The notes under the pieces: model-generated
Told to the model about the DNA's origin: nothing
Seen by the model: only the letters and a program-made list of their open reading frames with translations
Database searches by the model: none
Position numbers and translations under genes: made by a program
Shown: piece by piece, positions 1-54,174 of the stretch
How positions within the stretch are numbered: position 1 is the first letter of the stretch
Layout: each line of letters starts with the position of its first letter
Source of the DNA: Laetmonice hystrix
Lineage: Eukaryota
Assembly (NCBI GenBank): GCA_965235115.1
Contig: OZ249452.1
Span: 7,998,001-8,062,000 of the forward strand
Length of the DNA stretch: 64,000 bases
Direction of reading: 5' to 3'

Positions 1-190
1 GCCGACCTTTATGAGGTTGAGTTATAGTTTCAAAGGCAGGTTATGTAACCGTCGCCCTTTTATCCTGCGTCCAGGCAGTCATGTATTCCCTCACAAAGAG
101 TAAACTGTGTGGGCTAACATTATATATATACAGCGGCCTATGTACTGGAGACATCAGTTTCTCCTTTGCGCTTGTTCAGTTCAGACAGTT
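1..190 (+). repeat. Split direct repeat A1 (identical to 2883-3072)
   Basis: gccgacctttatgagg...gttcagacagtt occurs at 1-190 and 2883-3072 with no mismatch seen. It probably extends left of the window and contains a TATA-like tatatatatac at ~121-131. Confidence 0.95.
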
Positions 191-312
191 CTTATTTCTT
201 CGTACATGCGTTTGCCGGGTTGGGTCAGAATCAGACCGATTCTCCTGACACAAGATATAGAACAACATGTAGCCAGGTTATGTGTGACTAGGCGCAGCAG
301 AACGAAACCAAG

Positions 313-495
313 ATGTGTTTGACGGCACCTAGATGTCATGAGTGGCTAAGCAGCAGAGGAAAGTTCTGCCCGTATGGCAGAAAATGCAAGTTTCACCACC
401 CAAGATACAGGCGGCGGGACCCAAAATGCAAGGGCGCGGCTAAGATCCCCACGCCAAAAAACGGGAATGCAGGGTCCCGCTACATACCAATGTAG
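313..495 (+). CDS. Mini gag-like ORF, 60 aa, consisting mainly of a CCCH zinc finger and a basic tail
   Basis: ATG at 313 with in-frame TAG at 289-291 upstream. Peptide CHEWLSSRGKFCPYGRKCKFHH is C-x10-C-x5-C-x3-H. It overlaps the RT frame by 52 nt. Confidence 0.7.
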   Translation: MCLTAPRCHEWLSSRGKFCPYGRKCKFHHPRYRRRDPKCKGAAKIPTPKNGNAGSRYIPM

Positions 496-2087
496 ATGGG
501 GCCCTGATTTATGAAGCATGGGCCGAGGAACTCCCCGACGATGACCCAAAGCGTGATTATCTCCTCGAAGGAATCAAACATGGCTTCCATATCACAGACC
601 CAGCGGCAGTTAAAGACCGGGTCGAAGTCGCCAACTATCGGTCAGCGACCTGCGCGCGGAATGCAGGCAAGGTGGAGGCGCAGATCCTGGAGGAGGTTGC
701 CAACGGCAGGTATGGAATCGTGTCCGAGGCCCCAGCAATCGTGTCGGCTTTGGGGGCGATCGAGAAGCGGGATGGACGCGTACGGCTGATTCACGACTGC
801 AGTCGGCCGGCCGGCTCATCCCTCAACGCGTTTGCTTGGCATGATCGTTTCCAATACATGTCGCTGCAGGATGCCATCGATGTGATGCCGCGGGGAGCAT
901 ATCTGGCCAAAGTTGACCTGGCCAGCGCATACAGGTCAGTCAAGATTCACCCGTCCAATTGTGCAGCTACTGGTCTACAGTGGAAGTTTGCTGGTGATGA
1001 CGCTCCAACATACCTGGTAGACAAGCGTCTGCCCTTCGGAGCCAGGCGGTCACCGGAAATCTTCCATGAATTAGGCCAAGCAGTAAGGCGAATCATGGCG
1101 AGGAAAGGCTATGGTTCTATTATCGTATACTTGGACGATTTTCTTATTGTGTCACACAGTAAGGACGATTGCATGCGCACGCTCAACATGCTGATAAGAA
1201 CTCTTCGAAAGCTGGGGTTCGGCATAAACTATAACAAGGTGGACGGCCCACACCAGAAACTCACGTTCTTGGGCATAGTGCTCGACGCAGTCAATATGAC
1301 CATACAGCTCCCAGAAGAAAAGTGTGAAGACATCTTGTGGCATCTTAGACATGCGCGTCAAAAGCAGAAGATAAAGAAACGCGATCTACAATCCCTCGTC
1401 GGCAAGTTGAGCTGGGCCTGCCAATGTATTCAAGGGGGTCGAACGTTTATTCGCCGACTTATCGACCCAATAGCGCAGTTGAAATCACCCTGGCACCGTA
1501 CCCGTGTAACCAAAGACATGCAAAAAGATCTAGATTGGTGGATTGAGTTCATGGATGTGTTTAATGGTTGGACTCCAATGATTGACAACCGGCCAGTGCT
1601 CCCTGTATGGACAGATGCCTGTCTGCTAGCCGCGGGCGCAGTTTTTGGTACGGACTATGTATACACCCCATTTTGTAACTGGCCTGGTGCATCAGGTCTC
1701 CATATCAACCACAAGGAAACACTGGCGATTGAAACTGCGGCGTCACAGTGGGGACACAGATGGTCAAATCACCGCGTGTTCATATATTGTGATAACCAAG
1801 CTGCAGTTGGTATCATAAACAAGGGTAGCTGCAGAGACCCCTTTACAATGGACGCGCTGCGCAGGATCTTCTGGTGGTCAGCCAAGTTTAACTTTAAGAT
1901 AAAGGCCATTTACTATCCAGGCGAAATGAATGTGGTAGCAGACGCAGTATCAAGGTTACATGAACCGCGTGGGTATCAGCGACTCCTATCTGTTGTTGGA
2001 GGAAGGTTTATAGCAGCGGCGCAGTGTCAGGCTAATGAGCGCGTGAGTTACACAGTGTTAGAAGGCCTAAACTATCACCCAACTTAA
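444..2087 (+). CDS. Reverse transcriptase-RNase H (DIRS/Ngaro type), open from the stop at 441-443
   Basis: Motifs LLEGIKHGF, LIHDCSRP, AKVDLASAYRSV, LPFGARRSP, YLDD, LTFLG. RNase H acidic residues in TDAC, KETLA, CDNQ, ADAVSR. No stop over 547 codons. The track start at 672 is a GTG, so the frame is likely entered by frameshift. Confidence 0.95.
   Translation, partial: DPHAKKRECRVPLHTNVDGALIYEAWAEELPDDDPKRDYLLEGIKHGFHITDPAAVKDRVEVANYRSATCARNAGKVEAQILEEVANGRYGIVSEAPAIVSALGAIEKRDGRVRLIHDCSRPAGSSLNAFAWHDRFQYMSLQDAIDVMPRGAYLAKVDLASAYRSVKIHPSNCAATGLQWKFAGDDAPTYLVDKRLPFGARRSPEIFHELGQAVRRIMARKGYGSIIVYLDDFLIVSHSKDDCMRTLNMLIRTLRKLGFGINYNKVDGPHQKLTFLGIVLDAVNMTIQLPEEKCEDILWHLRHARQKQKIKKRDLQSLVGKLSWACQCIQGGRTFIRRLIDPIAQLKSPWHRTRVTKDMQKDLDWWIEFMDVFNGWTPMIDNRPVLPVWTDACLLAAGAVFGTDYVYTPFCNWPGASGLHINHKETLAIETAASQWGHRWSNHRVFIYCDNQAAVGIINKGSCRDPFTMDALRRIFWWSAKFNFKIKAIYYPGEMNVVADAVSRLHEPRGYQRLLSVVGGRFIAAAQCQANERVSYTVLEGLNYHPT
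456..506 (+). promoter_or_regulatory. -1 programmed ribosomal frameshift signal (slippery A AAA AAC plus downstream stem-loop)
   Basis: Heptamer A AAA AAC at 456-462 is in the ORF1 frame, followed by a 7-nt spacer and hairpin 470-506 (cagggtccc/ggggccctg and ctacat/atgtag). The -1 frame is the open RT frame. Confidence 0.75.
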
Positions 2088-2154
2088 ACCAAGCGGCTAC
2101 AGACTGTTACAGACTTAACATGCCTTCGTCAACCTACTCTCTACCTATGGGGTA

Positions 2155-2786
2155 TTGGGTACAGGCATGTCAATAACTCAGGGCTCAACCTTTTGCAAGC
2201 CTAAAGTAAGTGTTCATTGCGGGCACGTGAGCGTATTAACTTTGGTTAAATCAACTTTTGTGCTAGGGCGCGGTTTTGTCTTTGCGCTTGCTTTATGTCA
2301 TTTGTTTTCCAGTGGTAAGAGTCGTCTAAGACGACTAAGGTGTCAGCAGAACTCTTGTTTCACTTATGCTGGTGATGGTTATCAGCCATTTATATACGGC
2401 TTAGTTATCAGTCATTAACATGACTGGTGTGGCAACAGGCAACCTGGCCTAGTGTGTATTTGCGCGGGCATCAAGCTCAATTTAATATATCAGTCAGCGC
2501 ATGTGTGTTTTTATTTGCGTGGGCATCACGCCCCATCTTATTCAATGTCTTTTCTTGGCGCGGGCAGCGCACATATATATGTCGGGTTAGCGCGCTCACC
2601 ACGCCCAAGCTTACTCAATCAGCGCATGTGGTTATACCCGGTAGCGCGCGCATTGTGTTCCATTCGAGGCAAATGTTGTACCTGGGCAGGTCTTCAGCGC
2701 GCGTTAGTCCATGGAACTGTTCTTAGGAGTTTTTAGGTCGTAGTAATAAACTCCCGGTCTTCCCAAACCAGTGTTGAGAGTTTTAA
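2155..2786 (+). repeat. Split direct repeat B1
   Basis: 632 bp, identical to 3170-3801 except one substitution seen (gtgttcattgc vs gtgctcattgc). AATAAA lies near its 3' end. Confidence 0.95.
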
Positions 2787-2882
2787 GGGAAGCTAAAATA
2801 GGAGTTTAGCGTAGTTTAAAACTCGAGTCACCAAGCCTCCGCGCCAATACAGATGGTGCGATAAGATTATCCCCTTAATGGT

Positions 2883-3072
2883 GCCGACCTTTATGAGGTT
2901 GAGTTATAGTTTCAAAGGCAGGTTATGTAACCGTCGCCCTTTTATCCTGCGTCCAGGCAGTCATGTATTCCCTCACAAAGAGTAAACTGTGTGGGCTAAC
3001 ATTATATATATACAGCGGCCTATGTACTGGAGACATCAGTTTCTCCTTTGCGCTTGTTCAGTTCAGACAGTT
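2883..3072 (+). repeat. Split direct repeat A2
   Basis: Copy of 1-190 lying between B1 and B2. Confidence 0.95.
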
Positions 3073-3169
3073 TTTCCCACCCGCCCACCCGTTATACTTT
3101 CTTTTATAACCTGGTGTCCTGTTACCCTGTCTCACCAATTTTAGACTGGAAGAACAGCGTTTTGTTTTC

Positions 3170-3801
3170 TTGGGTACAGGCATGTCAATAACTCAGGGCT
3201 CAACCTTTTGCAAGCCTAAAGTAAGTGCTCATTGCGGGCACGTGAGCGTATTAACTTTGGTTAAATCAACTTTTGTGCTAGGGCGCGGTTTTGTCTTTGC
3301 GCTTGCTTTATGTCATTTGTTTTCCAGTGGTAAGAGTCGTCTAAGACGACTAAGGTGTCAGCAGAACTCTTGTTTCACTTATGCTGGTGATGGTTATCAG
3401 CCATTTATATACGGCTTAGTTATCAGTCATTAACATGACTGGTGTGGCAACAGGCAACCTGGCCTAGTGTGTATTTGCGCGGGCATCAAGCTCAATTTAA
3501 TATATCAGTCAGCGCATGTGTGTTTTTATTTGCGTGGGCATCACGCCCCATCTTATTCAATGTCTTTTCTTGGCGCGGGCAGCGCACATATATATGTCGG
3601 GTTAGCGCGCTCACCACGCCCAAGCTTACTCAATCAGCGCATGTGGTTATACCCGGTAGCGCGCGCATTGTGTTCCATTCGAGGCAAATGTTGTACCTGG
3701 GCAGGTCTTCAGCGCGCGTTAGTCCATGGAACTGTTCTTAGGAGTTTTTAGGTCGTAGTAATAAACTCCCGGTCTTCCCAAACCAGTGTTGAGAGTTTTA
3801 A
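3170..3801 (+). repeat. Split direct repeat B2, right end of the element
   Basis: Copy of 2155-2786 ending gagagttttaa, then AT-rich host sequence. Confidence 0.95.
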
Positions 3802-3927
3802 ATATAGAGAAGCCATTAATATACTGAAGTGAGTGAGTGGTTTTTAAGCAATAATCGCTGAGAGAATAAAGTTTTAAAAACTTGTCATCAGTCGTACTCC
3901 CTATGTACTCTACACTTACGTATAGTG

Positions 3928-4929
3928 TTATTTCTTACAAACTAAAAGTATGGCTCGAATTTCTCTCCGAAACGCCGGTCCACTAACACAGTACAGCACA
4001 AAATTAATGGCGTGATTTGAAGCTTCCAGGATATAAAGTATGACGTAGGCGATAAAAGGCACTGGGAAACCAGCTGTGGTCGTCAGGTGGCACACACCAA
4101 GAGGAACAGTTAGTACGGTATAGCTGACACTTAGAACAATCAATGTGTGTGTTAGGTGCAAGTTCCGCCCCGATATGGAGTCGGTAGAAACCGCGGAGTT
4201 TGACGCGGCTGTCCTGATCCTATTCTGTTTCCTCAGTTTATACATGAGATAAATGTTGCAGGAGCTAATGATAATAGCAGGTAGCAGTGCAAACACGAGA
4301 AGATCAACAATGTTCATTACAACGTTGAGCTGAATTTTGACGTACTTATCCATCCAGACACAGCCATCAGACTCGTTTAGTTCTACCATAGCGATGATGT
4401 AACTATTGCCGACCAACGACACCAGTGTTGTCACGCACACGACAACACAAGCACGGGTCTGACTTAGGAATAATTTGCCCCTTAATGGGAACCTCACAAC
4501 GAGAAACCGCTCAAATGTCACCGTCACAACAAGCCACGCGCTGAGACATCTTGAAAACGTTATGAAGTACTGAACCATCTTACAGGCCCAGTTTGAGCTC
4601 CCATGAATGTCGATTCCTGTCACCAACCAAACCCATCTTGCCGTCATACCGTTGCAAAGCAGGCAGATTGTATCCACGACGGCCAGACTTACCAAAAACA
4701 CAGATGTCGACGACTGTCGAAATTTCCTCCGTAAGAGAATGATCGCTGAGAACATGTTGCCGAAAATACCGAGTGTGAATATTATGGGCATCAAAACAAG
4801 AACGATGTAATCATCTACGGTGCTCGGTTTATGCCTATAATATATGGCGTCTCCTTCAAATCTGGGTGTAAACTCCGTCGTGAATTCAGTTTGTGTTGCA
4901 TTACGATTGGCAATGAACGCCACTGCCAT
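3928..4929 (-). CDS. Intronless class A (rhodopsin-like) GPCR, FMRFamide/TRH-receptor-like orphan type
   Basis: Seven hydrophobic segments, GN in TM1, LAVVD in TM2, C-K in TM3, ERF at the DRY position, NHAINFVLY at the NPxxY position. First ATG at 4929 (MAVAFIANRNAT, with an N-glycosylation sequon). Confidence 0.92.
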   Translation of the reverse strand: MAVAFIANRNATQTEFTTEFTPRFEGDAIYYRHKPSTVDDYIVLVLMPIIFTLGIFGNMFSAIILLRRKFRQSSTSVFLVSLAVVDTICLLCNGMTARWVWLVTGIDIHGSSNWACKMVQYFITFSRCLSAWLVVTVTFERFLVVRFPLRGKLFLSQTRACVVVCVTTLVSLVGNSYIIAMVELNESDGCVWMDKYVKIQLNVVMNIVDLLVFALLPAIIISSCNIYLMYKLRKQNRIRTAASNSAVSTDSISGRNLHLTHTLIVLSVSYTVLTVPLGVCHLTTTAGFPVPFIAYVILYILEASNHAINFVLYCVSGPAFRREIRAILLVCKK

Positions 4930-5989
4930 GGTGACACGTCCACAGCTCCGGTCCCAGCTCAGTACACGGCTACTTTGCAAACTGAAGTCTTCAGGTTCAG
5001 AAACATTGTTATGTTACAGTCAAGGCAGGGAACGGAATTATGTGTGAAGAGAGGCAAAGGTCCTGTGGTTGCGATTGTGAAATAGACCACACGGACTCCT
5101 TGAGAACGTTTGACCCTTGGATTATTATAAAACAAGAGAAGTTCTTATTTTTCCATAAAGCATTATCTAACGTTGGCAGACTTCCAGCATTATCAAGATT
5201 TAATTCTGATTGGATGCCAATCAGCGGAGAGCAGGTCAAATAGCTGATAAGTTCCCATTCTGTCTGATTTGTAATCACTTGGGAATAAAAGGTGGGGCTT
5301 GCTTCGCCGGCAGCGAAATGTTTTTTCATGCGATAGTCGCATTTGATGGACCTTATCGAGTCAAGCAATGGTTCATTATCCAAGCGATGACAGTATCTAT
5401 TGCAGCGATATCTATGCATAAGTTGAAGTGATACATTTTGCGAGATTTATACAATTGTCATTTAATCATACGAGAAGCAAAAATAAAATCGTGAAGCGAT
5501 GATAAACTGTCATGCGATTTCTGGCGATGTATTGAGCCCTTGGCCCTTAAACACGATTTTTACGGTCAAACGCCTTCTCATTGTCTACATTTATATGTTA
5601 ACTTGTTTTTTTTTATCTATACCTATAGTCTGTAGTTTGAAGAGTCCTTTCTAGTGTCTCTAATATACACAAAACCAGCTTTACATCTACCTTATATTTC
5701 CACTTTCAATATAGACCTCTAAGGCTAATTCAACTCAATGTTCAATATCCTATCTACACATCCTTTGTCGTTAACAACCGTCTTAACCGTGTAGGATTGC
5801 AGAAACATCTCTGTGGAACCCTTACCATTTTTCAAAAAGAGTAGGGTATTGCCTCCCGGTGGGAGGTTTCCTTCACACTTCATCGTCTTGACCACCCCCT
5901 CGTGACTCAGGGGGTGGGTGGTGGGTGGGGGTAGGTCTCTTACTGAATTGTTTTATATCGCCCTGAAAATGGCTAAATTTTTTCCCACA

Positions 5990-6499
5990 TGGCATGAACC
6001 CTCCAATTCACTCATTGTGTGTAGGTGATGCTCGGACACAAGCAACACGTGTGTCAGCTGCAAGTTACGCTGACATAAAGAGTCGGTAGAGTTTGACATT
6101 GTTGCCCTTACCTTATTCCGAGGGATCATGTAACTATTGATGACCACTGACAGTAGTGTTGTCACGCCAACAACAACGCAGCCATGAGCCCGGCTGAGGT
6201 ATAATTTGCCTTTTACTGGGAATCTTATAACGAAAACCCGCTGAACTGCCATAACAAGGCACGCACTGAGACATCTAGAAAACCGTGATGAAAACTGAAA
6301 CATTTTACACGCCCAGTTTGAGATTCCAATAATGGCGAACCCTGTCACTTGCCAACCCCACCTGCGGGCTGCTATACAGGCAGATCGTATCCACGAAAGT
6401 CAGACGAATCAAAAACACAGATGTCGATGACTGTCGAAATCTCTTCCTTAGAAGAAAGATCGCAGAGAACATGTTGCCGAAAATACCGAATGTGAACAT
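5990..6499 (-). pseudogene. GPCR pseudogene, paralog of the flanking receptors
   Basis: FTFGIFGNMFSAIFLLRKRFRQSSTSVFL, frameshift, then NWACKMFQFSSRFSRCLSACLVMAVQRVF...NSYMI joined directly to RNKVRATMSNSTDSL (TM5 region deleted). TM7 is absent. Confidence 0.85.
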
Positions 6500-7293
6500 G
6501 ATTGGTTGTTGTCTTCTTCCTTGCTTCTTTTCGGAGTCTGTGTGTAAAATGCAACATGCTTGACCACAACTGCTCGTCTCTATCTCTGATTGAGTACAGT
6601 ACTTCCAGACAATTAAAGTAATATCTGGCTGTCAACTTGACTCAGATTTCTGGGGCCCGTCTTACTAAGAATGTCACTCCCCAAATCAGGGACATCCCCA
6701 TATTGGGGACATCTCTCCAACACTGTTTCAATGGAGGGACCTTTTGGTATTACACCTCACAACGGGGATATCCCTGATCTGGGGATTTTAGTGGGGATTT
6801 TGCTGGATCACCGTTATTGAGATGGTCCCCTGGTTTCGCCAATACAGCTATTCTTCCCAATTGATCAGGGGTGCTAATGTATCAGTCTTTGCTGAAAACG
6901 TAGTATAATATAGTAGCAGTTCAGAAAGAATACTTGCTCAAACGTGAAGGTAGAGCACACAAGAAATGTAAGGAGGTTCCAGATCCATTGCTCGCTAATC
7001 TTTGTTTGCCATTACGCATGGGTCCATGAGAGTTCTTGAGATAACCTGTCTCATTTAATTAACTAAAAAATGTAATTGGGGAAAGTCGTGATAAATTACA
7101 TCAGAAGTGATTCAGACTCTGAAACAAGCTCATCTAACTTTGACAAACATTTTCTTCAGATTACAAACCGGATGTGTGCAATACGGCTGAGGGGACTTCA
7201 AACGGGCGATACGTAACCATGTTACCTGGGGTGCTTGAAAATCAATCTGAAAAAATCACAAATCCAATTGTTTAATGGAGGGACCTTAATTAA

Positions 7294-7643: not shown

Positions 7644-8172
7644 AGGGAGTCGTAAAATTCTTTTTTTTTTCGATTTATGGCAGTCTTAGAAACATATGAT
7701 TCGCATACCTTGGACTCCCAGTAACATCATGTGAGACTGTTATGGCCCAGCGACCAGTATTTAGTAAGGAAAATATGCCAAATCTCTCGCAAATACGTAG
7801 CTCAGAATTAGCGAGCGGCCCACAGGATATTTGAGTTGGCCGTGGTCGGGCGATGATGAAGCGTGATCACGTGACTTCCGGGTGTACATGCGGTATTAAG
7901 GTCAACACTAGACTAGAGGGAGATTCTCTTCCACACCCGGAAGTCACGTGATCACGCGTCATCATCGCCCGACCGCGGCCAACTCAAATATCCTGTGGGC
8001 CGCTCGCTAATTCTGAGCTACGTATTTGCGAGAGATTTGGCATATTTTCCTTACTAAATACTGGTCGCTGGGCCATAACAGTCTCACATGATGTTACTGG
8101 GAGTCCAAGGTATGCAAATCATATGTTTCTAAGACTGCCATAAATCGAAAAAAATGAATTTTACGACTCCCT
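7644..8172. mobile_element. Fold-back Kolobok-type MITE with ~240-bp inverted arms
   Basis: 7644-7885 is a near-perfect reverse complement of 7933-8172, with a 47-bp spacer. TTAA flanks, AGGG...CCCT ends. Confidence 0.9.
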
Positions 8173-8952: not shown

Positions 8953-9897
8953 TTATGCCTCATTAAGCACATATTTCTCTTTAGAAAACATTGCACGTAT
9001 TTCTCGCCGAAACGCTGGACTGCTAACACAGTACAGAACAAAATTGATGGCGTGATTTGAGGCTTCAAGGATGTAGCAAATGAGGTAGATGATGAAAAAT
9101 TCGTCTGACAAACTAACCGCTACAGCTAAATTGTGAATTCCAATGGGAAGAGTCAGCACAGTGTAAGTAATGCTCAGTGCGATCAACGTCTGTGTCAGGT
9201 GCAGGTCCCGCCCAGATAAAGAGTCCGTCACTGCGGAGTTTGACGTTGTTGCCATTAACTTCTTTCGTTTCCTTAGTTTATATACAAGATAAATGTTGCA
9301 GATGGTAATGATAATGGCAGGCAGTAGTGCAAAGATAACAAGGTCAACAATGTTCATCACAACGTTAAGGTGACTTACTATGTACTTTTCCTTCCAGTAG
9401 CATGTACCAGGGCTATAGAGTTCTACCATAGCGATCATGTAACTATTAACGACCAGTGACAGCAGTGTTGTCACGCCAACAACAACGCATCCATGAGCCC
9501 GGCTTATGAATAACTTGCCTTTAAATGGGAATCTTACAACGAGAAACCGCTGTACTGTCACTGCCACAACAAACCACGCACTAAGACATCTTGTAAACGT
9601 GATGACGTACTGCGACATCTTACACGCCCAGTTTGCGAATCCGGCAATGTCGAATCCTGTTACTATCCAAATCCACCTACCGGTCATCCCGTTGCTAAGC
9701 AGGCAAATCGTATCCGCAAAAGCCAGGCTTAGCAGAAACATGTAGGTGGATGACTGTCGAAACTTCTTCCTTAAAAGAACGATCGCTGAAAATGTGTTGC
9801 CGACAATGCCAAGCGTGAATATGATGGGCATGGATACAAGAATGATGCCATCCTCGACCGCGCTTGATTTAGACTCAGTCCTGTTTGATAAATCCAT
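8953..9897 (-). CDS. Intronless class A GPCR, paralog of 3928-4929
   Basis: 314 aa from ATG 9897, 7 TM segments, GN, LAFAD, WACK, QRF at the DRY position, NHAINFVLY. Confidence 0.92.
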   Translation of the reverse strand: MDLSNRTESKSSAVEDGIILVSMPIIFTLGIVGNTFSAIVLLRKKFRQSSTYMFLLSLAFADTICLLSNGMTGRWIWIVTGFDIAGFANWACKMSQYVITFTRCLSAWFVVAVTVQRFLVVRFPFKGKLFISRAHGCVVVGVTTLLSLVVNSYMIAMVELYSPGTCYWKEKYIVSHLNVVMNIVDLVIFALLPAIIITICNIYLVYKLRKRKKLMATTSNSAVTDSLSGRDLHLTQTLIALSITYTVLTLPIGIHNLAVAVSLSDEFFIIYLICYILEASNHAINFVLYCVSSPAFRREIRAMFSKEKYVLNEA

Positions 9898-15243: not shown

Positions 15244-18200
15244 ATGTTTCACATACACCTCGCCTGGCTGTTCTGCGGTAAGATTTCCGACTTAATAATG
15301 TATAGGCTTCTGTCAGTGTGACACAAGAGCCTTGTGCTCCAAGTACTGGCTTCCACTGCTGTTCTCATATTTAAATTTCATCAAATAATGTAATGGAATA
15401 AGAGAGTTTTGCGTCAAGTCCCTTCTTTTTTCTGGTTGTGGGGACCGGAGGACAAAAGCCCTTTTACCTGACGTGTTCTAGATCTAGACTCTATAGACCC
15501 TGTGTCTGCTCTGAAGAAGACCTGAGTTTCTATCTATTATACTGTATACATTTGCATTGTTATTGTCACACTGACGTCACACGTTTACGATCAATGTGTC
15601 TTGGATATAGGAATGTACATGTTGAAGGCCAGTTATATAACGTTATTGTCGTTGATAAAGTATTTCTTTCTGCTCATTAGTGTCCTTTGTGCTGGTATCT
15701 ACATGGGAACTATCGATTCACAAACCCGACGTGAATACGAGTAGCAATACAGGAACCCTCGTCCCGGAACAATATTTGCGCTATGATGCAAGTGGAAGTA
15801 CTACAAATCTGTCCAAATCTATCAAACATGAGGATACTAGTATGGAAAAGGAAGAGATTCTCACAACATCAAGAGTCCTGGTGGCAACAATAGCAGAGAG
15901 AAAACCAAAAAGATACAAACATCCAGCAGGAAAAAAAGTGCAATCCTTCCTGTCTAATAATACAGAGGAATCAAACGCATCAAATATAACAACACAAGAA
16001 ACAACTACATTTGATGGAGGCACAACGTCGTCAGAAGAAGAACAATATCAGTCAACAATAGATCCTGTAGAGATAACAAGCACTTTATTAGAAAGAACAT
16101 CAACAGAACAAGATGAAACACCGACTGAAGAAAATCCAGTAACTACCACATCATATCCAACGACACTTGAAGAAAGTACAACACCACAAGATGAAGAAAC
16201 TACAGCAGCAACAACGAAATATCAAACGACTATCCTAGATGGCGTCTCTACAGAGAAAACAGAGAACCCTACGACAACAGAGGGCGACGTTTTATCAACA
16301 TCGCTTCCTTTAGAGACAAGTACAATATTAGAAGACACATCAACAGTGCAGGATGTGGAAACTACTCCAGAAAAGCTAGCGTCATCGACATCAAATCCAA
16401 CGACAATTTCAGACGAAAAAACTACACAGGAAAGCCATGACACGTCGACAAAAGAAGAGACGACAAGCACTTCACTGGAAACCACGAGAGAGACAACAAG
16501 CGTGAACTTACAAACGACACAAGAAATACCAGATGAAGAAACAACATCTATATCAATGACAACAACTAAAACAACCTCCGAAACGAGTACATTAGAGGAA
16601 GGCACCACAGAGGAAGTAGAGATGACCACGAGAAGACAGGAAGAAATCGCCACAACATCAGTGCCTACAGAAAAGACAACAGGTATAACAGGAAAGACCA
16701 CTCCAGAAATAGAAGAATCGACAACGAATGAAGAACTGATCCCCACATCGAAGTCTGGTGAGACAAGCACAGCATTTGAAAGGACATCAACAATTCAAGA
16801 TGACCAAACAACATCAGTGCCGACGACATCGTATCAAACGAGTATATTGGATGAAGGCACCACGCCTAAAATAGGAGAAACTACGAGAGAGGAAGAGCTT
16901 TATCCAACATCAACTGCTGGAGAGACAATAAGAACCACATTGGAAGGGACGTCTACCTCGGAGGGCGAAGAAACAACGCCCGAGACAACCGAATACCCAA
17001 CGACAAGTAGAGAGAACCCCACGACGGCCGAGGAGCTGGTCTCAACACTAGAGCCGAAAGTGACAACAACATTGGAAAGCAAATTAACAACCATTGCTGA
17101 CAGAACAACTGTAGAAGAATCAACAACAACATATCCGACAACAATGGTGGAGCAAACGACCACACAACAAATAGAGGAATCTACAACAAATGAACTTGTC
17201 TCCACACCAGGGGATAAAGAGACTACGACATTGGAAAGTTCAATTACAACTGATCAAACAACTACAAAAGAACCGAAAGTAACGACAACAATGGGGGAAC
17301 AAACGACCACACAACAAATAGAGGAATCTACAACAAATAAACTTGTCTCCACACCAGGGGATAAAGAGACTACGACATTGGATATTTTAATTACAACTGA
17401 TCAAACAACTACAAAAGAACCAAAAGTAACGACAACAATGGAGGAACAAACGACCACACAAAAGATAGAAGAAACTACAACAAATGACCGTATCTCCACA
17501 CCAGGGGATAAAGAGACTACGACATTGGAAAGTTCAATTACAACTGGTCAAACAACTGCAAAAGAACCAAAAGTAACGACAACAATGGAGGAACAAACGA
17601 CCACACAACAAATAGAGGAATCTACAACAAATAAACTTGACTCCACACCAGGGGATAAAGAGACTACGACATTGGAAAGCAAATTAACAACCATTGCTGA
17701 CAGAACAACTGTAGAAGAATCAACAACAACATATTCGACAACAATGGTGGAGCAAACGACCACACAACAAATAGAGGAATCTACAACAAATAAACTTGTC
17801 TCCACACCAGGGGATAAAGAGACAACAACATTGGAAATTTTTATTACAACTGACCAAACAACTACAAAAGAACCGAAAGTAACGACAACAATGGAGGAAC
17901 AAACGACCACACAAAAGATACAAGAAACTACAACAAATGACCTTATCTCCACACCAGGGGACAAAGAGACTACGACATTGGAAAGTTCAATTACCACTGA
18001 TCAAACAACTACAACAGAACCAAAAGTAACGACAACAATGGAGTTACAAACGACCACACAACAAATAGAGCAAACTACAACCAATGAACTTGTCTTTACA
18101 TCACAAGCCACAGACGAGATGACCACACTATTTGATACGACATCAGCGACTCAAGATGAGGAAACAACATCCACTTCCGGATCGACGCCAACGCCACCTC

Positions 18201-21200
18201 CCGGATCTACAACACCAGCTCCGAAAAAACCGCCAGATCTCGGTTCGTACGATTTGCATTTAACAAAATTGCTTAGTTTGTTCAAACGAATGTGGTGGTA
18301 TTGCTGGTGAGTGGTTTTTTCACATTTACCAGCTGACAATTTTGATAAAAAAAATAATATGGATCGTGCAAAATGTTTTGCTTGCTAACAGAGGATGAGA
18401 CTGTTTTGTTGGAATCAAGTCTGCAATGGGAGGGCAACTTTACGGATGACCTGGCTGATAGCACTTCCGATGCATTCAAGACTCTGCAAAAAGAAGTCAA
18501 GGCAAACGTAAGAACAATAATACGTTACAGTCAGAATAACAAATTGTGTCTACTTCGCTGTATTCAACCGTTCGCATATAGTGTTGTAATTCTGGGAAGG
18601 GATCTATATATAAGAATGAAAACAAAGCATTGCCGTAGAACTGCACTGGCGCTGTTTGCAAATCGGTCATCGATTCGGACCGTATTGTAAAAAGATGCCA
18701 TCTCTTAGTTATGACAGTGTCATCATTATCATCATGGCTACGATTATTTTTAGTATCAAATATTCCCATCCGAGGTATTCATTTTACATGAATAATTATT
18801 CATTTTACATGAATAATTATTCATTTTACATGAATAATTAGTGGATGCAAGAAGATGTATCCTTAATATTATATGTAACTAGATTTCTCATACCTTTTGT
18901 CGATAAGGTGAAAGAAGTTTACAAAGATGTGGAAGGTTTTAACAAAGTGGAAGTCCACGCCTTCCTGAGGTGAGTTGCCTCACTACATATTGCTTTTCAT
19001 ATGTTTTAAAGCATTTTAAACCTTGAAAGACCGGCGGCCTTCCCCCTCTGATGAAGATTGGTCAAATTTGTTTACTAAATACAAGAGTCGACCCGAGTGT
19101 TTTAGGTCATTCAGGCTGTCCCTTATACATTTAAGCGGCAACCAATTTTACAGTGTACATGTTTAAGGTAGAATTGGTTGTAGTACTAATAGACAGAGGT
19201 ATACGATTATATTCCACCAAGTGTCTTCAAGATAAAGTCCCATTTTGAAATATCCTAAAAGGCATGAATTAGCCATTTCTTCTGGAGGGACAGTAATCAG
19301 TTCACCTTACCCAACGATTTCATTTGTACGAAGTATAACGTATACATATCAATAAAAAAGGAACGTAAATATACAAATCTTGGGCATAATTTCACTAGTG
19401 TCTTGCATAATTCTTGCTTTCAAACCCTGTGTTCATATTGTAGGATATCCCCCGATTCGTACCACATGATACCAGCCAAGTCGACCAATGAAATGATCGA
19501 GTCGGTGTATGACCTTGTGTTTGACCTCCGGGCGGCCTTGGTGGCGCCGGAGAGGCTGACCGCCCAGATCCGGAACGCTACGGTCGGATTATATGGAGTG
19601 GTCATCCAGGGTCAACCAGTTGACCCTGACCACGTTAACGACGTCATGGCGGACATGGAAGACGGTAAAGCTCTTCTAGATGTGATTTTAAGAAATAAGC
19701 AGTTTAGATAGATGGATTACTTTTGGAGAGAAATGAGCAGGGTCATGTCCAAAGATTTACAACAAAACCAAGTTAAAGCAGTTTGCCCTCAGTTTCCACC
19801 TTACTGGAACTTCAAAAGTGATACGTAAATAACAGCTTTGCTCAGGTCCCTGTCCCTCCGGGTATGGCATCGGTTACTTCCGGCCAGGGGTCACTTGAGC
19901 TTCCGGTAGGAGGCCCTTTGCCAGGGGTCCCTGTTATGGGAGATGGCTTTCGTCTGGACGGGTCTGATTTTTTTAAAAAATTTTATTTTTTGTTTCTGAC
20001 GTGCAGACTTGGAGGAGATCGGAGGGATTCGTGACACAGTTTGTCAGAACAGGACTCTGTGTGACCTCGATTACAGCTGTGAGCGTGACGACTCGGTCCC
20101 TGAGGGTGTAACGTGTAGTTACAAGTGTTATGGTTACCCGTGCGGCGAGGGTGCCCAGTGTTACATCACAGAAGGTCATGACGCAGCGTGTCGGTAAGTG
20201 CGCGCGCAACTCCTCAATGACGTGCTTCCTCCGCAGACGACATTATGTCACATTTTCAATAAATAGGGGATAACACATCTAAAAACTTCTCACTATATTT
20301 TGGGCATAATAAATATGCAGACGGCATTATGCCATGATCTGTGACACCAACGGTATCGCCATGTATGGAACAAAGTTAAAGAGAGAGATCTTATGTTGAT
20401 GATTCCCTCACTAATTAAGACATAGAATAATTGACGTTTTGTCGTTAGACTGTGTCATTATTTTACGTCATACGTCACACACTTTGACGTTGCGGGTAAG
20501 ATCACTGGGTTGTTTTTACGTCATACGTCACACACGTTGACGTTGCGTGTAAGATCACTGGGTTGTTTTTACGTCATACGTCACACACTTTGACGTTGCG
20601 TGTAAGATCACTTGGTTGATTTTACGTCATGCGTCACACAATTGACGTTGCGTGTAAGATTACTGGGTTGTTTTTTACCCGCCAGGTGTCTCTCCGGCAT
20701 GTTTGACGTATCCGGAAAGTGTGTCAACCAATGGGTGATCATCGGCCCCGTCATTGCTGCCATCGTCTTGATCATCATCATAATGGCAGCAGTCATCATC
20801 AGCGTCAAGGTCAAGCGAGCCCGCAAGGTCAAGGAAAGGTCCAACGAATTCTAGTAGGCATCAATTGTCTGTTCGTCTGTCTGCTTTTGAAGGGCAACAC
20901 TCGCCCTTCAAAGAGTGGGATATTTCTATCGTAAATCAAATGGGCAGACTACCGTACCAAGCACAATTTATTTTAAATATGTTTAACGAACATAACTAGC
21001 GTTCCATGTTACCCCCATCATGGCGACGACTGGATAAACTAGTTACTACGCATACTATAGAGTTACAAAAGATACATCACCTGCAGCGCCCTCTATTGGC
21101 ATTAAATGGCATCGTCTGTCAGCAATCCTTCTTTGTTTCCCGTGGGGACACTGGAGACAATAGATTCATTATCTACCATTTTTGATTTTCACAATGTTTT

Positions 21201-39889: not shown

Positions 39890-45795
<5,906 letters not shown>

Positions 45796-53073: not shown

Positions 53074-54174
53074 TTATAAGTGTGTTATATACGGTCCGTC
53101 ATGTCCGTCATCAGTCATTGCACGTGACAGGGCCTCAGCTTCAATGACAGCGATGGAGTCTCTGGTCGCGTCCCGCTGAGTTCTCCCCGGCCTAGCGTTG
53201 TACATGGAACACCGACATACTTCAACAAGCTTATCCCTGAACAACTTCCCGCTCAAAATGTAGAGTAGGAAGTTTATAGCGTGATTCAGCACCAGAATGA
53301 GACGCAATAAGTAGCTGCTAGTTTGACTGAGAAACTCTCTGTCCTTGCTGAAGAGCGAATCTAGCCACCACGTTAGGGTCAGCGGTAGTGACGTCACAAG
53401 GAACGTCACACTAACCAATAAAAGCATACCTGTCATTCGCCGCGCCTTGGTGGTAGCCAAAGCGGTCGGTGTGTTCTTTAGGATGCGTTGTAATTTGTCA
53501 TTCCGCCTTATTGCAACAAGTGTGATTATGTTACAAGTTAGGATTATAGTTGAAGGAACCACGCTATAGACCATCATCCAGAAAAACAAATAAAGCGACA
53601 CATAATGTCCTTCGCTAGAAAAATAACATATTTTTTCTGTCTCAACTTGCTGAAGTTCGTATGTAAAGAATACATGAGATTTCACGGCAGCCATGACGAT
53701 GACTATAAGAGCCATCCAGCGATATGTAACCCGTGAACTGCACAATATTTTGACCTTCAGGGGTTTTTTAACAGCTAGGAGTCGTTCTATGGTCACAGCT
53801 ACGATAAACCACGCACTTGTAGCAGGGGGTGCCCACGACAAGAAGGCCCAGACTTTGCAGATGGTGTTGGATACGAGATTTGGTTTAAATCCCAATATTA
53901 TATCAAAGCTCTCAAACGTGGGCCTCGCCGTCCAAACATAGATAGAGTCGGAGATATTCAGGGCGATCAAAAATGGAACTGGACCAAGAGTTTTCAACTT
54001 CACCAGAACAATGATGGCTAACATATTGCCTGTTGTCCCAAGAAAAGCAATCAGAATTGGTATAACACGATAGAGCAATTTGCCCTCAATCCTTCGCTCT
54101 GTAGGCTCCGAGGAATTGCTGAGTAGAGTAAGATTACTGGTCCAAGTCTCCGAGGTGAATGTCTCCTCCGTCAT
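53074..54174 (-). CDS. Intronless class A GPCR of the same broad family as the 4-10 kb cluster
   Basis: 366 aa from ATG 54174, N-terminal NLT/NSS sequons, GN, LNISD, CK, ERL at the DRY position, NHAINFLLY. Confidence 0.92.
   Translation of the reverse strand: MTEETFTSETWTSNLTLLSNSSEPTERRIEGKLLYRVIPILIAFLGTTGNMLAIIVLVKLKTLGPVPFLIALNISDSIYVWTARPTFESFDIILGFKPNLVSNTICKVWAFLSWAPPATSAWFIVAVTIERLLAVKKPLKVKILCSSRVTYRWMALIVIVMAAVKSHVFFTYELQQVETEKICYFSSEGHYVSLYLFFWMMVYSVVPSTIILTCNIITLVAIRRNDKLQRILKNTPTALATTKARRMTGMLLLVSVTFLVTSLPLTLTWWLDSLFSKDREFLSQTSSYLLRLILVLNHAINFLLYILSGKLFRDKLVEVCRCSMYNARPGRTQRDATRDSIAVIEAEALSRAMTDDGHDGPYITHL

What the first reader, a model, noticed from the sequence alone, without database searches (positions are those of the whole stretch)
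441..506. Textbook -1 ribosomal frameshift fusing the CCCH finger to RT in a DIRS-type element
Seen: A AAA AAC (X XXY YYZ) lies exactly in the ORF1 frame, then a 7-nt spacer and a two-stem hairpin (9 bp with one G-U, plus 6 bp, ACCA loop). The -1 frame opens at 444 and has no ATG upstream of the conserved RT N-terminus (LLEGIKHGF). Established: this arrangement drives gag-pol fusion in retroviruses and Ty3/gypsy elements. I do not recall it being well characterised for YR retrotransposons. Inference: the product is a ~590-aa ZF-RT-RNH fusion plus excess free 60-aa finger peptide.
Basis: partly seen in the sequence, partly recalled or inferred. Interest (0 to 1): 0.75.

Follow-up and report, generated by a model that had tools for sequence, protein, structure and literature searches.

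The report
Conserved -1 frameshift signal in retrotransposon
A compact mobile element in this animal genome carries a classic "slippery site plus hairpin" signal that lets ribosomes slip from a tiny zinc-finger gene into the reverse-transcriptase gene, and related elements keep the same signal, so it is probably real but of a well-known kind.

Summary
A_AAA_AAC (456-462) lies in the phase of ORF1 (313-495). A 7-nt spacer follows, then a bulged hairpin at 470-506 (-27.7 kcal/mol, z -4.1). The RT/RNase H frame is -1, opens at 444, runs to 2087 and has no ATG before codon 139.

Comparative evidence supports programmed -1 ribosomal frameshifting:
- In 32 of 33 related loci with a CCCH-finger ORF1 and RT in the -1 frame, an in-phase AAAAAAN lies in the overlap.
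- In two loci the overlap is exactly the heptamer.
- An A6 run is found at 30/30 of the first set of -1 junctions but at 1/25 in-frame-stop junctions and 0/6 +1 junctions.
- The window's own clade (L082, L083, L085; NJ bootstrap 93) keeps the 7-nt spacer and the same basal helix. One pair covaries C-G/U-A/G-C at wobble positions. z is -4.5 to -4.8.

- The family is Ngaro-like: split direct repeats, gag-RT/RNH-tyrosine recombinase, no methyltransferase.
- This clade has no recombinase, and its ORF1 is reduced to Met + finger + basic tail (42-60 aa).
- The hairpin is specific to this clade, not to the whole family.

Nothing has been shown at the protein level. I rate it a new member of a known kind, of moderate interest.

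The parts
1..193 (+). A1 arm of the split direct repeats. It is probably cut by the left edge of the window; by comparison with A2 about 96 nt may be missing.
   Evidence: 99.5% identical to 2883-3075. In relative L083 A2 abuts B1, which suggests that 2787-2882 also belongs to A (inference).
313..495 (+). ORF1: mini 'gag', made of Met + CCCH zinc finger + basic tail (60 aa, stop TAG 493-495).
   Evidence: Homologous to the C-terminal finger of the 340-460-aa ORF1 of relatives. The same mini layout is seen in L082, L083 and L085 (alignment A5).
456..462 (+). Slippery heptamer A_AAA_AAC in ORF1 phase; the proposed -1 shift site.
   Evidence: In-phase AAAAAAN at 32 of 33 homologous -1 junctions. 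An A6 run is present at 30/30 -1 junctions against 1/25 and 0/6 at the other junction types.
463..469 (+). 7-nt spacer between heptamer and hairpin.
   Evidence: The same 7-nt length is found in L082, L083 and L085.
470..506 (+). Bulged stem-loop, the proposed frameshift stimulator. Basal helix 470-479/497-506, apical helix 480-485/490-495, loop 486-489. The 3' arm lies on the conserved Gly-Ala-Leu codons of the RT frame.
   Evidence: z -4.09. The homologous helix in L082, L083 and L085 gives z -4.8, -4.5 and -4.7. 93% of cells are paired against 32-57% when slid, with one pair C-G/U-A/G-C.
444..2087 (+). RT/RNase H reading frame (-1 relative to ORF1). 547 open codons, no internal stop, no ATG before codon 139.
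   Evidence: Pfam RVT_1 E 6.9e-14. RNase H-like hits are weak (PF17917 E 0.005). 942 relatives with E<=1e-10. The family profile matches retroelement RTs in the PDB.
2155..2786 (+). B1 arm of the split direct repeats.
   Evidence: 99.8% identical to 3170-3801.
2883..3075 (+). A2 arm of the split direct repeats (it may start at 2787).
3170..3801 (+). B2 arm, the right end of the element. It is preceded by a 94-nt unique spacer (3076-3169).
   Evidence: A similar A2-to-B2 spacer is present in L001 (106 nt) and L083 (61 nt).

Best explanation
The window holds a compact, recombinase-less derivative of an Ngaro-like (order DIRS) retrotransposon. Its layout is A1 - mini ORF1 (CCCH finger) - RT/RNase H - B1 - A2 - B2.

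Proposed mechanism: ribosomes start at the ORF1 ATG (313). Most terminate at 493-495, giving a 60-aa finger peptide. A fraction slips back one base by tandem tRNA slippage on A_AAA_AAC (456-462) while paused by the hairpin 7 nt downstream (470-506). These continue in the -1 frame and give a finger-RT/RNase H fusion of about 591 residues (50 + 541 codons).

What is shown: the sequence anatomy, the thermodynamic excess of the hairpin, and conservation of the heptamer phase, the spacer and the helix in relatives.

What is inferred: that slippage actually occurs, its efficiency, that ATG 313 is used, and that the finger tethers the RT to the element's RNA.
For: 1. Anatomy is as described.
2. The heptamer is in phase at 29 of 30 homologous -1 junctions among the window and 73 other loci (L001-L081), and at 3 of 3 further clade members. 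The seventh base is C in 29 of 32.
3. The -1-frame stop lies 0-6 nt before the heptamer in 8 loci. The zero-frame stop lies directly after it in 7 loci, plus 3 of the 4 clade members. In L042 and L073 the overlap is the 7 nt of the heptamer. The shift can therefore only happen there.
4. An A6 run is tied to the frame layout: 30/30 against 1/25, 0/6 and 1/13.
5. Only 6 of 29 loci have any ATG in the RT frame upstream of the conserved N-terminus.
6. The hairpin is conserved in the window's clade at 58-62% RT identity. The spacer is 7 nt in all four members. The 11-bp helix is also predicted independently by RNAalifold. Covariation falls at third codon positions of both arms. z is -4.1 to -4.8 with 0/200 shuffles each.
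7. A_AAA_AAC is listed among the most shift-prone heptamers for mammalian ribosomes (PMC5009743).
8. The RT/RNH frame is intact and the repeat arms are 99.5-99.8% identical, so the copy is young.
Against: - There is no expression, ribosome-profiling or peptide evidence.
- Helix covariation rests on four sequences. Only one pair changes on both sides, and 49 of 500 shuffles reach the observed score.
- Outside this clade the region after the heptamer is not unusually structured (mean z about 0; KS p 0.06). The hairpin is therefore not a universal requirement.
- The 3' arm is also constrained by Gly-Ala-Leu coding.
- In copies from a related genome (P0127, P0134) the RT frame stays open upstream and contains an ATG, so some relatives might not need the shift.
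- Use of ATG 313 is assumed.
- DNA of the closest relatives (74-77% identity) could not be read.
Confidence: 0.82

Rival explanations
1. Transcriptional slippage: the polymerase adds one A in the A6 run, so a minority of transcripts carry ORF1 and RT in one frame and no ribosomal slippage is needed.
For: An uninterrupted A6 run is the invariant feature of all -1 junctions. L016 has an out-of-phase A7 run instead of the in-phase heptamer.
Against: - The phase of the run is fixed (X_XXY_YYZ) in 32 of 33 loci, and the seventh base is C in 29 of 32. Transcriptional slippage would constrain neither.
- The conserved 7-nt spacer and hairpin in the window's clade have no role in this model.
- Six A's is short for efficient slippage by cellular polymerases (general knowledge, not tested here).
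Confidence: 0.05
2. Independent initiation: the RT frame is translated on its own, by reinitiation after the short ORF1, by a non-AUG start or by an internal entry site. The heptamer is then incidental.
For: ORF1 is only 42-60 codons long in this clade, and in three of the four members it stops directly after the heptamer. This layout is permissive for termination-reinitiation. P0127 and P0134 have an upstream ATG in the RT frame.
Against: - The window has no ATG, GTG or TTG in the RT frame between 444 and 672, and no ATG before codon 139. A start there would lose the conserved N-terminus.
- The RT-frame residues are conserved right up to the heptamer region (alignment A1).
- The model does not explain the heptamer phase or its link to the -1 layout, nor the full-length 340-460-codon ORF1 of most relatives, where reinitiation is implausible.
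Confidence: 0.05
3. Splicing supplies an upstream ATG to the RT frame.
For: None found.
Against: No tool predicted an intron. Relatives from many sources keep the heptamer, and the overlap can be as short as 7 nt. The same family solves the junction by an in-frame leaky stop or a +1 site in other branches, which argues for translational recoding as the general strategy.
Confidence: 0.03
4. Fossil signal: the cassette worked in the ancestors, but this copy is silent or not translated from ATG 313, so nothing happens here today.
For: The copy has no recombinase and no capsid-like gag body. Its left end is cut by the window. No expression data exist.
Against: The RT/RNH frame of 547 codons is uninterrupted. 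The repeat arms are 99.5-99.8% identical. The mini ORF1, heptamer and hairpin are all intact and match clade members that diverged to about 60% identity. This reading concerns activity of this copy, not the nature of the signal.
Confidence: 0.2

Closest known systems
Canonical eukaryotic -1 programmed ribosomal frameshift cassettes at gag-pol junctions of retroviruses and LTR retrotransposons (X_XXY_YYZ, short spacer, stem-loop or pseudoknot)
   Same: A heptamer of the most shift-prone class (PMC5009743). It lies in zero-frame phase, with a 7-nt spacer and a stable downstream stem-loop. The downstream polymerase ORF is in the -1 frame without its own start. A nucleic-acid-binding zinc finger sits just upstream of the junction.
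   Different: The element class uses tyrosine-recombinase-type architecture with split direct repeats, and has no protease or DDE integrase. The upstream ORF in this clade is only 42-60 codons. The finger is CCCH rather than the CCHC box reported for retroviral and LTR-retrotransposon Gag proteins and some YR retrotransposons (PMC6681497). The stimulator is a plain bulged hairpin; with a 4-nt loop an H-type pseudoknot is not possible. In many relatives the zero-frame stop directly follows the heptamer.
Ngaro-like retrotransposons (order DIRS; A1-[ORFs]-B1A2B2, gag, RT/RNase H, tyrosine recombinase; PMC8547959, PMC3783388, PMC6681497)
   Same: The window, L001 and L083 have split direct repeats. 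RT/RNase H carries no methyltransferase. Most relatives encode gag - RT/RNH - a Cre-like tyrosine recombinase in that order.
   Different: The window, L083 and L001 lack the recombinase. The window's clade also lacks the gag body. A unique spacer of 61-106 nt sits between A2 and B2. Recoding signals at the ORF1/RT junction were not described in the papers I could search.
Truncated non-autonomous derivatives of YR retrotransposons (for example SIRE, derived from VIPER; PMC6681497)
   Same: A shortened derivative that keeps the terminal repeats of its parent family and presumably depends on functions supplied in trans.
   Different: This derivative keeps an intact RT/RNase H, a finger ORF and the recoding cassette. 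Its clade has stayed coding-competent down to about 58% RT identity.

Membership tests
-1 programmed ribosomal frameshift cassette | X_XXY_YYZ heptamer in the phase of the upstream ORF | tested here: met
   A_AAA_AAC at 456-462, with codons at 457 and 460 in the ORF1 frame.
-1 programmed ribosomal frameshift cassette | Downstream ORF in the -1 frame, overlapping the upstream ORF and lacking its own start before conserved residues | tested here: met
   The frame is open 444-2087 and the overlap with ORF1 is 444-492. The first ATG is at codon 139.
-1 programmed ribosomal frameshift cassette | Stable RNA structure 5-9 nt downstream of the heptamer | tested here: met
   7-nt spacer; hairpin 470-506; -27.7 kcal/mol; z -4.09; 0/200 shuffles.
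-1 programmed ribosomal frameshift cassette | Conservation of the shift site in relatives | tested here: met
   In phase in 32 of 33 relatives with the same layout. The overlap equals the heptamer in L042 and L073. An A6 run is present at 30/30 -1 junctions against 1/25 and 0/6 at the other types.
-1 programmed ribosomal frameshift cassette | Conservation or covariation of the stimulatory structure | tested here: inconclusive
   Within the clade (4 sequences) 93% of cells are paired and one pair shows three Watson-Crick types, but 49 of 500 shuffles reach that score. The structure is not conserved outside the clade.
-1 programmed ribosomal frameshift cassette | Trans-frame protein product observed | not testable with these tools
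Ngaro-like YR retrotransposon (order DIRS) | Encodes a tyrosine recombinase | tested here: not met
   No recombinase remnant in the window by tblastn with 14 family recombinases. The family's ORF3 profile matches Cre at E 1.6e-12, with invariant R, K, H, R, W and Y columns. Most relatives have it. This copy is therefore a derivative, not an autonomous member.
Ngaro-like YR retrotransposon (order DIRS) | Split direct repeats A1-[ORFs]-B1A2B2 | tested here: met
   1-193 = 2883-3075 and 2155-2786 = 3170-3801. A 94-nt spacer before B2 is a small departure from the scheme.
Ngaro-like YR retrotransposon (order DIRS) | RT plus RNase H without a methyltransferase domain | tested here: met
   RVT_1 E 6.9e-14. 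RNase H-like hits are weak in the window (E 0.005), but PF17917 is recorded for relatives. The ORF ends after the RNase H region, and no methyltransferase hit was found.
Ngaro-like YR retrotransposon (order DIRS) | RT groups with reference Ngaro elements in a phylogeny | not tested
   No named reference Ngaro sequence came back from any search. Hits are unnamed or called 'hypothetical' or 'reverse transcriptase domain-containing'.
DIRS1-like elements in the strict sense | Inverted terminal repeats with an internal complementary region, and a methyltransferase domain | tested here: not met
   No inverted terminal repeats bound the element. No methyltransferase domain was found.

The most novel reading that the evidence does not exclude
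The window belongs to an old, still coding-competent lineage of Ngaro-like derivatives that has shed both the capsid-like gag body and the tyrosine recombinase. It keeps only a CCCH finger, a -1 frameshift cassette and RT/RNase H.

This would be an RT-encoding 'half-autonomous' element. It must either borrow recombinase and gag from autonomous relatives or integrate by another route. The frameshift would set the ratio of free finger peptide to finger-RT fusion.

Around it, one retroelement family switches repeatedly between three recoding solutions at the same junction: the -1 heptamer, a leaky in-frame stop, and a +1 site of the TTT_CGT type.
Probability: 0.4. Interest if true: 0.65.

Novelty: new member of a known kind. 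Interest (0 to 1): 0.5.

Why it matters
How the polymerase of tyrosine-recombinase retrotransposons is expressed is barely described. My searches of about 8.4 million open papers and preprints found no slippery-site analysis for them, and a 2016 recoding review does not mention them in the part that is held.

This locus and its relatives give a clear, comparatively supported answer for one large Ngaro-like family of uncertain hosts; several relatives sit in bacterial bins whose names suggest symbionts of marine invertebrates, which I take as host contamination (inference). The polymerase is made by recoding, here by a textbook -1 cassette. The mechanism itself is not new.

The wider pattern is useful natural material for people who study recoding signals and the reduction of retroelements. 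It includes three interchangeable recoding modes in one family and a minimal 'finger + RT' lineage with a conserved hairpin.

Tried and rejected
1. I first read ORF1 as a one-off 5' truncation of a 340-460-aa gag, because only the finger region matches relatives' gag. I rejected this after L082, L083 and L085 showed the same Met-finger-tail mini ORF1 in an exclusive clade.
2. Family-wide conservation of the hairpin was not found. z scores after the heptamer average about 0 across 29 loci. Only 6 of 29 fall within the lowest 3% of control positions. Dinucleotide-shuffle z is -0.8 to -2.6 for nine relatives.
3. DNA of the closest relatives (74-77% RT identity, ENA sample ERZ26222911) could not be obtained ('file too large'). 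The same happened for P0013. Only their proteins could be compared.
4. Rfam gave no match in 1-4000.
5. Literature: no paper describing frameshift sites in YR retrotransposons was found. A PubMed-id look-up of an older Ngaro paper was not held. One review search for stop-codon context was uninformative.
6. Pseudoknot prediction: no tool was available. The 4-nt loop in the window rules out a classical H-type pseudoknot through the loop.
8. The large representative-protein search, structure prediction and fold search were not used, because the family scans and the word search settled the protein identities.
Full report
**1. Observation**

- ORF1 runs from ATG 313 to TAG 493-495 (60 aa) and carries a CCCH finger. 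The Pfam CCCH matches have E 1e-4 to 2e-3 and lie below the gathering score.
- AAAAAAC lies at 456-462, with ORF1 codons AAA at 457 and AAC at 460. This is the X_XXY_YYZ phase.
- The -1 frame is closed by TAA at 441-443 and open from 444 to 2084.
- In that frame the first ATG/GTG/TTG is at 672, and the first ATG is at 858, codon 139. The conserved RT N-terminus starts near 500.
- After a 7-nt spacer, RNAfold gives a bulged hairpin at 470-506: a 10-bp basal helix, a 6-bp apical helix, an ACCA loop and one bulged A.
- Its energy is -27.7 kcal/mol against -14.9 +/- 3.1 for dinucleotide shuffles (z -4.09, 0 of 200).
- AAAAAAC occurs once in the element and 37 times in the window on both strands. 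An in-phase copy in the 49-nt overlap is expected about 0.005 times.
- Rfam has no match.

**2. What the element is**

The 547-codon -1 frame is a reverse transcriptase (RVT_1 E 6.9e-14). It has a weak RNase H-like tail, and a profile of the family matches retroelement RTs among solved structures.

The element is bounded by split direct repeats: 1-193 equals 2883-3075 (99.5%) and 2155-2786 equals 3170-3801 (99.8%). The next gene is a host GPCR on the minus strand. The host is therefore an animal; nothing suggests human sequence.

The protein word search found 942 relatives. I read DNA for L001, 80 metagenome loci L002-L081 and L082-L085.

Most complete relatives have three ORFs:
- a 340-460-aa ORF1 ending in the CCCH finger;
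- RT/RNase H of about 540 aa;
- a third ORF of 330-370 aa.

A profile of 18 of these third ORFs matches Cre recombinase at E 1.6e-12, with invariant R, K, H, R, W and Y columns. With split direct repeats and no methyltransferase, this is the Ngaro-like architecture described in PMC8547959, PMC3783388 and PMC6681497. It is not the DIRS1 architecture in the strict sense.

**3. The junction across the family**

I classified 74 loci with a readable junction, including the window, by the frame of the finger ORF relative to RT:

| Junction type | Loci |
|---|---|
| RT in the -1 frame | 30 |
| Same frame, single stop between | 25 |
| RT in the +1 frame | 6 |
| Decayed or cut | 13 |

For the -1 loci:
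- 29 of 30 have an in-phase AAAAAAN in the overlap.
- The three further clade members also have it, giving 32 of 33. The seventh base is C in 29 of 32.
- The only exception, L016, has an out-of-phase A7 run.
- The -1-frame stop lies 0-6 nt before the heptamer in eight loci, and the ORF1 stop lies directly after it in seven. In L042 and L073 the overlap is exactly the heptamer.
- An A6 run within 120 nt upstream of the conserved RT N-terminus occurs in 30/30 -1 loci, 1/25 in-frame-stop loci, 0/6 +1 loci and 1/13 unclear loci.
- Only 6 of 29 have any ATG in the RT frame before the conserved N-terminus.

This is strong comparative evidence that the heptamer is the site where the reading frame changes. 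A_AAA_AAC is listed among the most shift-prone heptamers for mammalian ribosomes (PMC5009743).

**4. The hairpin**

Across the 29 loci, the 75 nt after the heptamer are not unusually structured. Mean z is about 0. Only 6 of 29 fall within the lowest 3% of control positions in their own RT genes, with KS p 0.06. Nine relatives folded with dinucleotide shuffles give z +1.0 to -2.6. The hairpin is therefore not a family-wide feature.

The window's own clade behaves differently. L082, L083 and L085 are 58-62% identical to the window in RT. They form an exclusive group with it (NJ bootstrap 93/100), and L001 is sister at 99/100. In all four members:
- the heptamer is followed by a 7-nt spacer;
- a hairpin follows whose basal helix starts CAGGG and ends CCCUG (CCCUA in L085);
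- z scores are -4.1, -4.8, -4.5 and -4.7, each with 0 of 200 shuffles as stable.

On the alignment, 93% of the cells of an 11-pair helix are paired, against 32-57% when the partner is slid by 1-3 columns. Three pairs change on one side only and stay paired. One pair is C-G, U-A and G-C in different members, and both of its columns are third codon positions in the RT frame. RNAalifold predicts the same helix independently.

With four sequences the shuffle control is not decisive (49 of 500). The 3' arm also sits on the conserved Gly-Ala-Leu codons. I therefore call the structure conserved and the covariation suggestive.

**5. ORF1 is a conserved mini gene, not an accident**

My first reading was that ORF1 is a truncated gag. 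That was wrong as a description of this copy alone. L082, L083 and L085 have the same layout: a Met directly before the finger, the CCCH finger, a basic tail, and the heptamer, in 42-46 codons (alignment A5).

L083 also has the same overall map as the window: A1, mini ORF1, RT/RNH, B1, A2, a short spacer and B2. It has no gag body and no recombinase. L001, the sister, has a full ORF1 but no recombinase.

Gene state in the window copy:
- RT/RNase H: no stops and no frameshifts.
- Mini ORF1: intact.
- Gag body and recombinase: absent as lineage-level losses (one loss each), not as scattered breaks.

I did not write out or build the joined sequence.

**6. Mechanism and rivals**

Best explanation (confidence 0.82 for the signal): tandem -1 slippage on the heptamer, stimulated in this clade by the hairpin.

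- *Transcriptional slippage on the A run* does not explain the fixed phase, the conserved seventh base, or the conserved spacer and helix.
- *Reinitiation or internal initiation* lacks a start codon and does not explain the link between the A6 run and the frame layout. It is worth keeping in mind because ORF1 is so short, and because two copies in a related genome (P0127, P0134) have an upstream ATG in the RT frame that reads through the finger region in the wrong frame.
- *Splicing* has no support.
- *Whether this particular copy is expressed* is unknown.

**7. Comparison and novelty**

The cassette works like the gag-pol -1 signals of retroviruses and LTR retrotransposons. A 2003 survey cited in PMC5009743 found pol in the -1 frame in 28 of 51 animal LTR elements.

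I found no description of such signals in tyrosine-recombinase retrotransposons. The held part of that review mentions neither DIRS nor tyrosine recombinases. Older subscription papers on Ngaro could not be read, so prior mention cannot be excluded.

Verdict: a new member of a known kind, found in an unusual reduced element.

- I stopped and typed it into no sequence tool. I searched the literature only with the letters seen in my own loci, and I now rely on the paper that the search returned (PMC3498833).
- Scripts printed the ends of open frames for all loci, including decayed relatives. That amounts to showing where some of their RT frames are interrupted. I have not used, repeated or listed those positions.
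Assembly gaps (744 N in the window) were left alone.

Noticed in passing
L003, L009, L012-L014, L020, L025, L026, L028, L030, L031, L033, L038, L041, L044-L046, L052, L053, L057, L064, L066, L075, L077, L079 (junction between ORF1 and RT): In 25 relatives the finger ORF and RT are in the same frame, separated by a single stop. The stop is TGA in 14 loci (followed by C in 11) and TAG in 11 loci (always followed by G), and never TAA. UGA is called the leakiest stop, and a 3' C is called especially important for readthrough, in PMC4132726. This looks like programmed readthrough. In the NJ tree these loci are interleaved with the -1 loci, so the two modes seem to have been exchanged several times.
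   Followed up: partly
L022, L023, L032, L034, L036, L037 (end of ORF1): Six relatives form one clade and have RT in the +1 frame. They share an invariant CGT_TTT_CGT in ORF1 phase, encoding a Pro-Pro-Arg-Phe-Arg tail, 2-15 codons before the ORF1 stop. The TTT_CGT core is the same as the +1 shift-site class described for several RNA viruses of insects, plants and vertebrates in PMC3498833. I found no report of it for a retroelement.
   Followed up: partly
window 1-3801; L083 2351-6454; L001 1276-5123: The window's clade and its sister L001 lack the tyrosine recombinase that most relatives have. The clade also lacks the gag body. Even so, RT/RNH stays open (543-550 codons) at about 58-62% identity between members. 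The protein clusters of relatives have 13-22 members at 90% identity, which suggests multicopy families. How such elements integrate is unexplained.
   Followed up: partly
window 3076-3169; L001 4859-4964; L083 5846-5906: A unique spacer of 61-106 nt lies between A2 and B2 in all three elements. The simple A1-[ORFs]-B1A2B2 scheme does not include it.
   Followed up: no
P0127, P0134 (ENA sample ERZ26222911; no DNA available): In copies from a related genome (74% RT identity) the RT frame stays open upstream of the Lys-Lys site. It reads through the finger region in the wrong frame and contains an ATG, so gene callers produced 513- and 590-aa proteins. Some copies might express RT without a shift, or this may be fortuitous.
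   Followed up: partly
L016 around 1875: This is the only -1-type relative without the in-phase heptamer. It has a run of seven A's in a different phase. The cause could be a sequencing or indel difference, or a different slippage mode.
   Followed up: no
window 3928-4980 (-), 8953-9897 (-), 53074-54174 (-), and about 5950-6510: There is a cluster of intronless rhodopsin-type / Srw-like GPCR genes (Pfam 7tm_1 E 3e-16 to 5e-18). A diverged partial duplicate of the first gene lies about 1.7 kb away (76-84% repeats). The element sits just beyond the 3' end of the first gene.
   Followed up: partly
window 15680-18310 (+) and 40001-44000: An 876-codon ORF with no Pfam match lies in a strongly A-rich stretch (AT skew 0.51). 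A strongly C-rich stretch (GC skew -0.43 to -0.24) holds several overlapping ORFs. Both are probably low-complexity repeats rather than genes.
   Followed up: no
window 7818-8000: An inverted repeat with 68-nt arms, 97% complementary and 47 nt apart. It may be a small foldback or MITE-like element.
   Followed up: no
L007, L014: The ends of these metagenome contigs repeat each other exactly (105 and 123 nt; units of 4296 and 5439 bp). This is expected if assemblers close the split direct repeats into a circle. It gives unit lengths for complete three-ORF relatives, compared with 2882 bp from A1 to A2 in the window.
   Followed up: no
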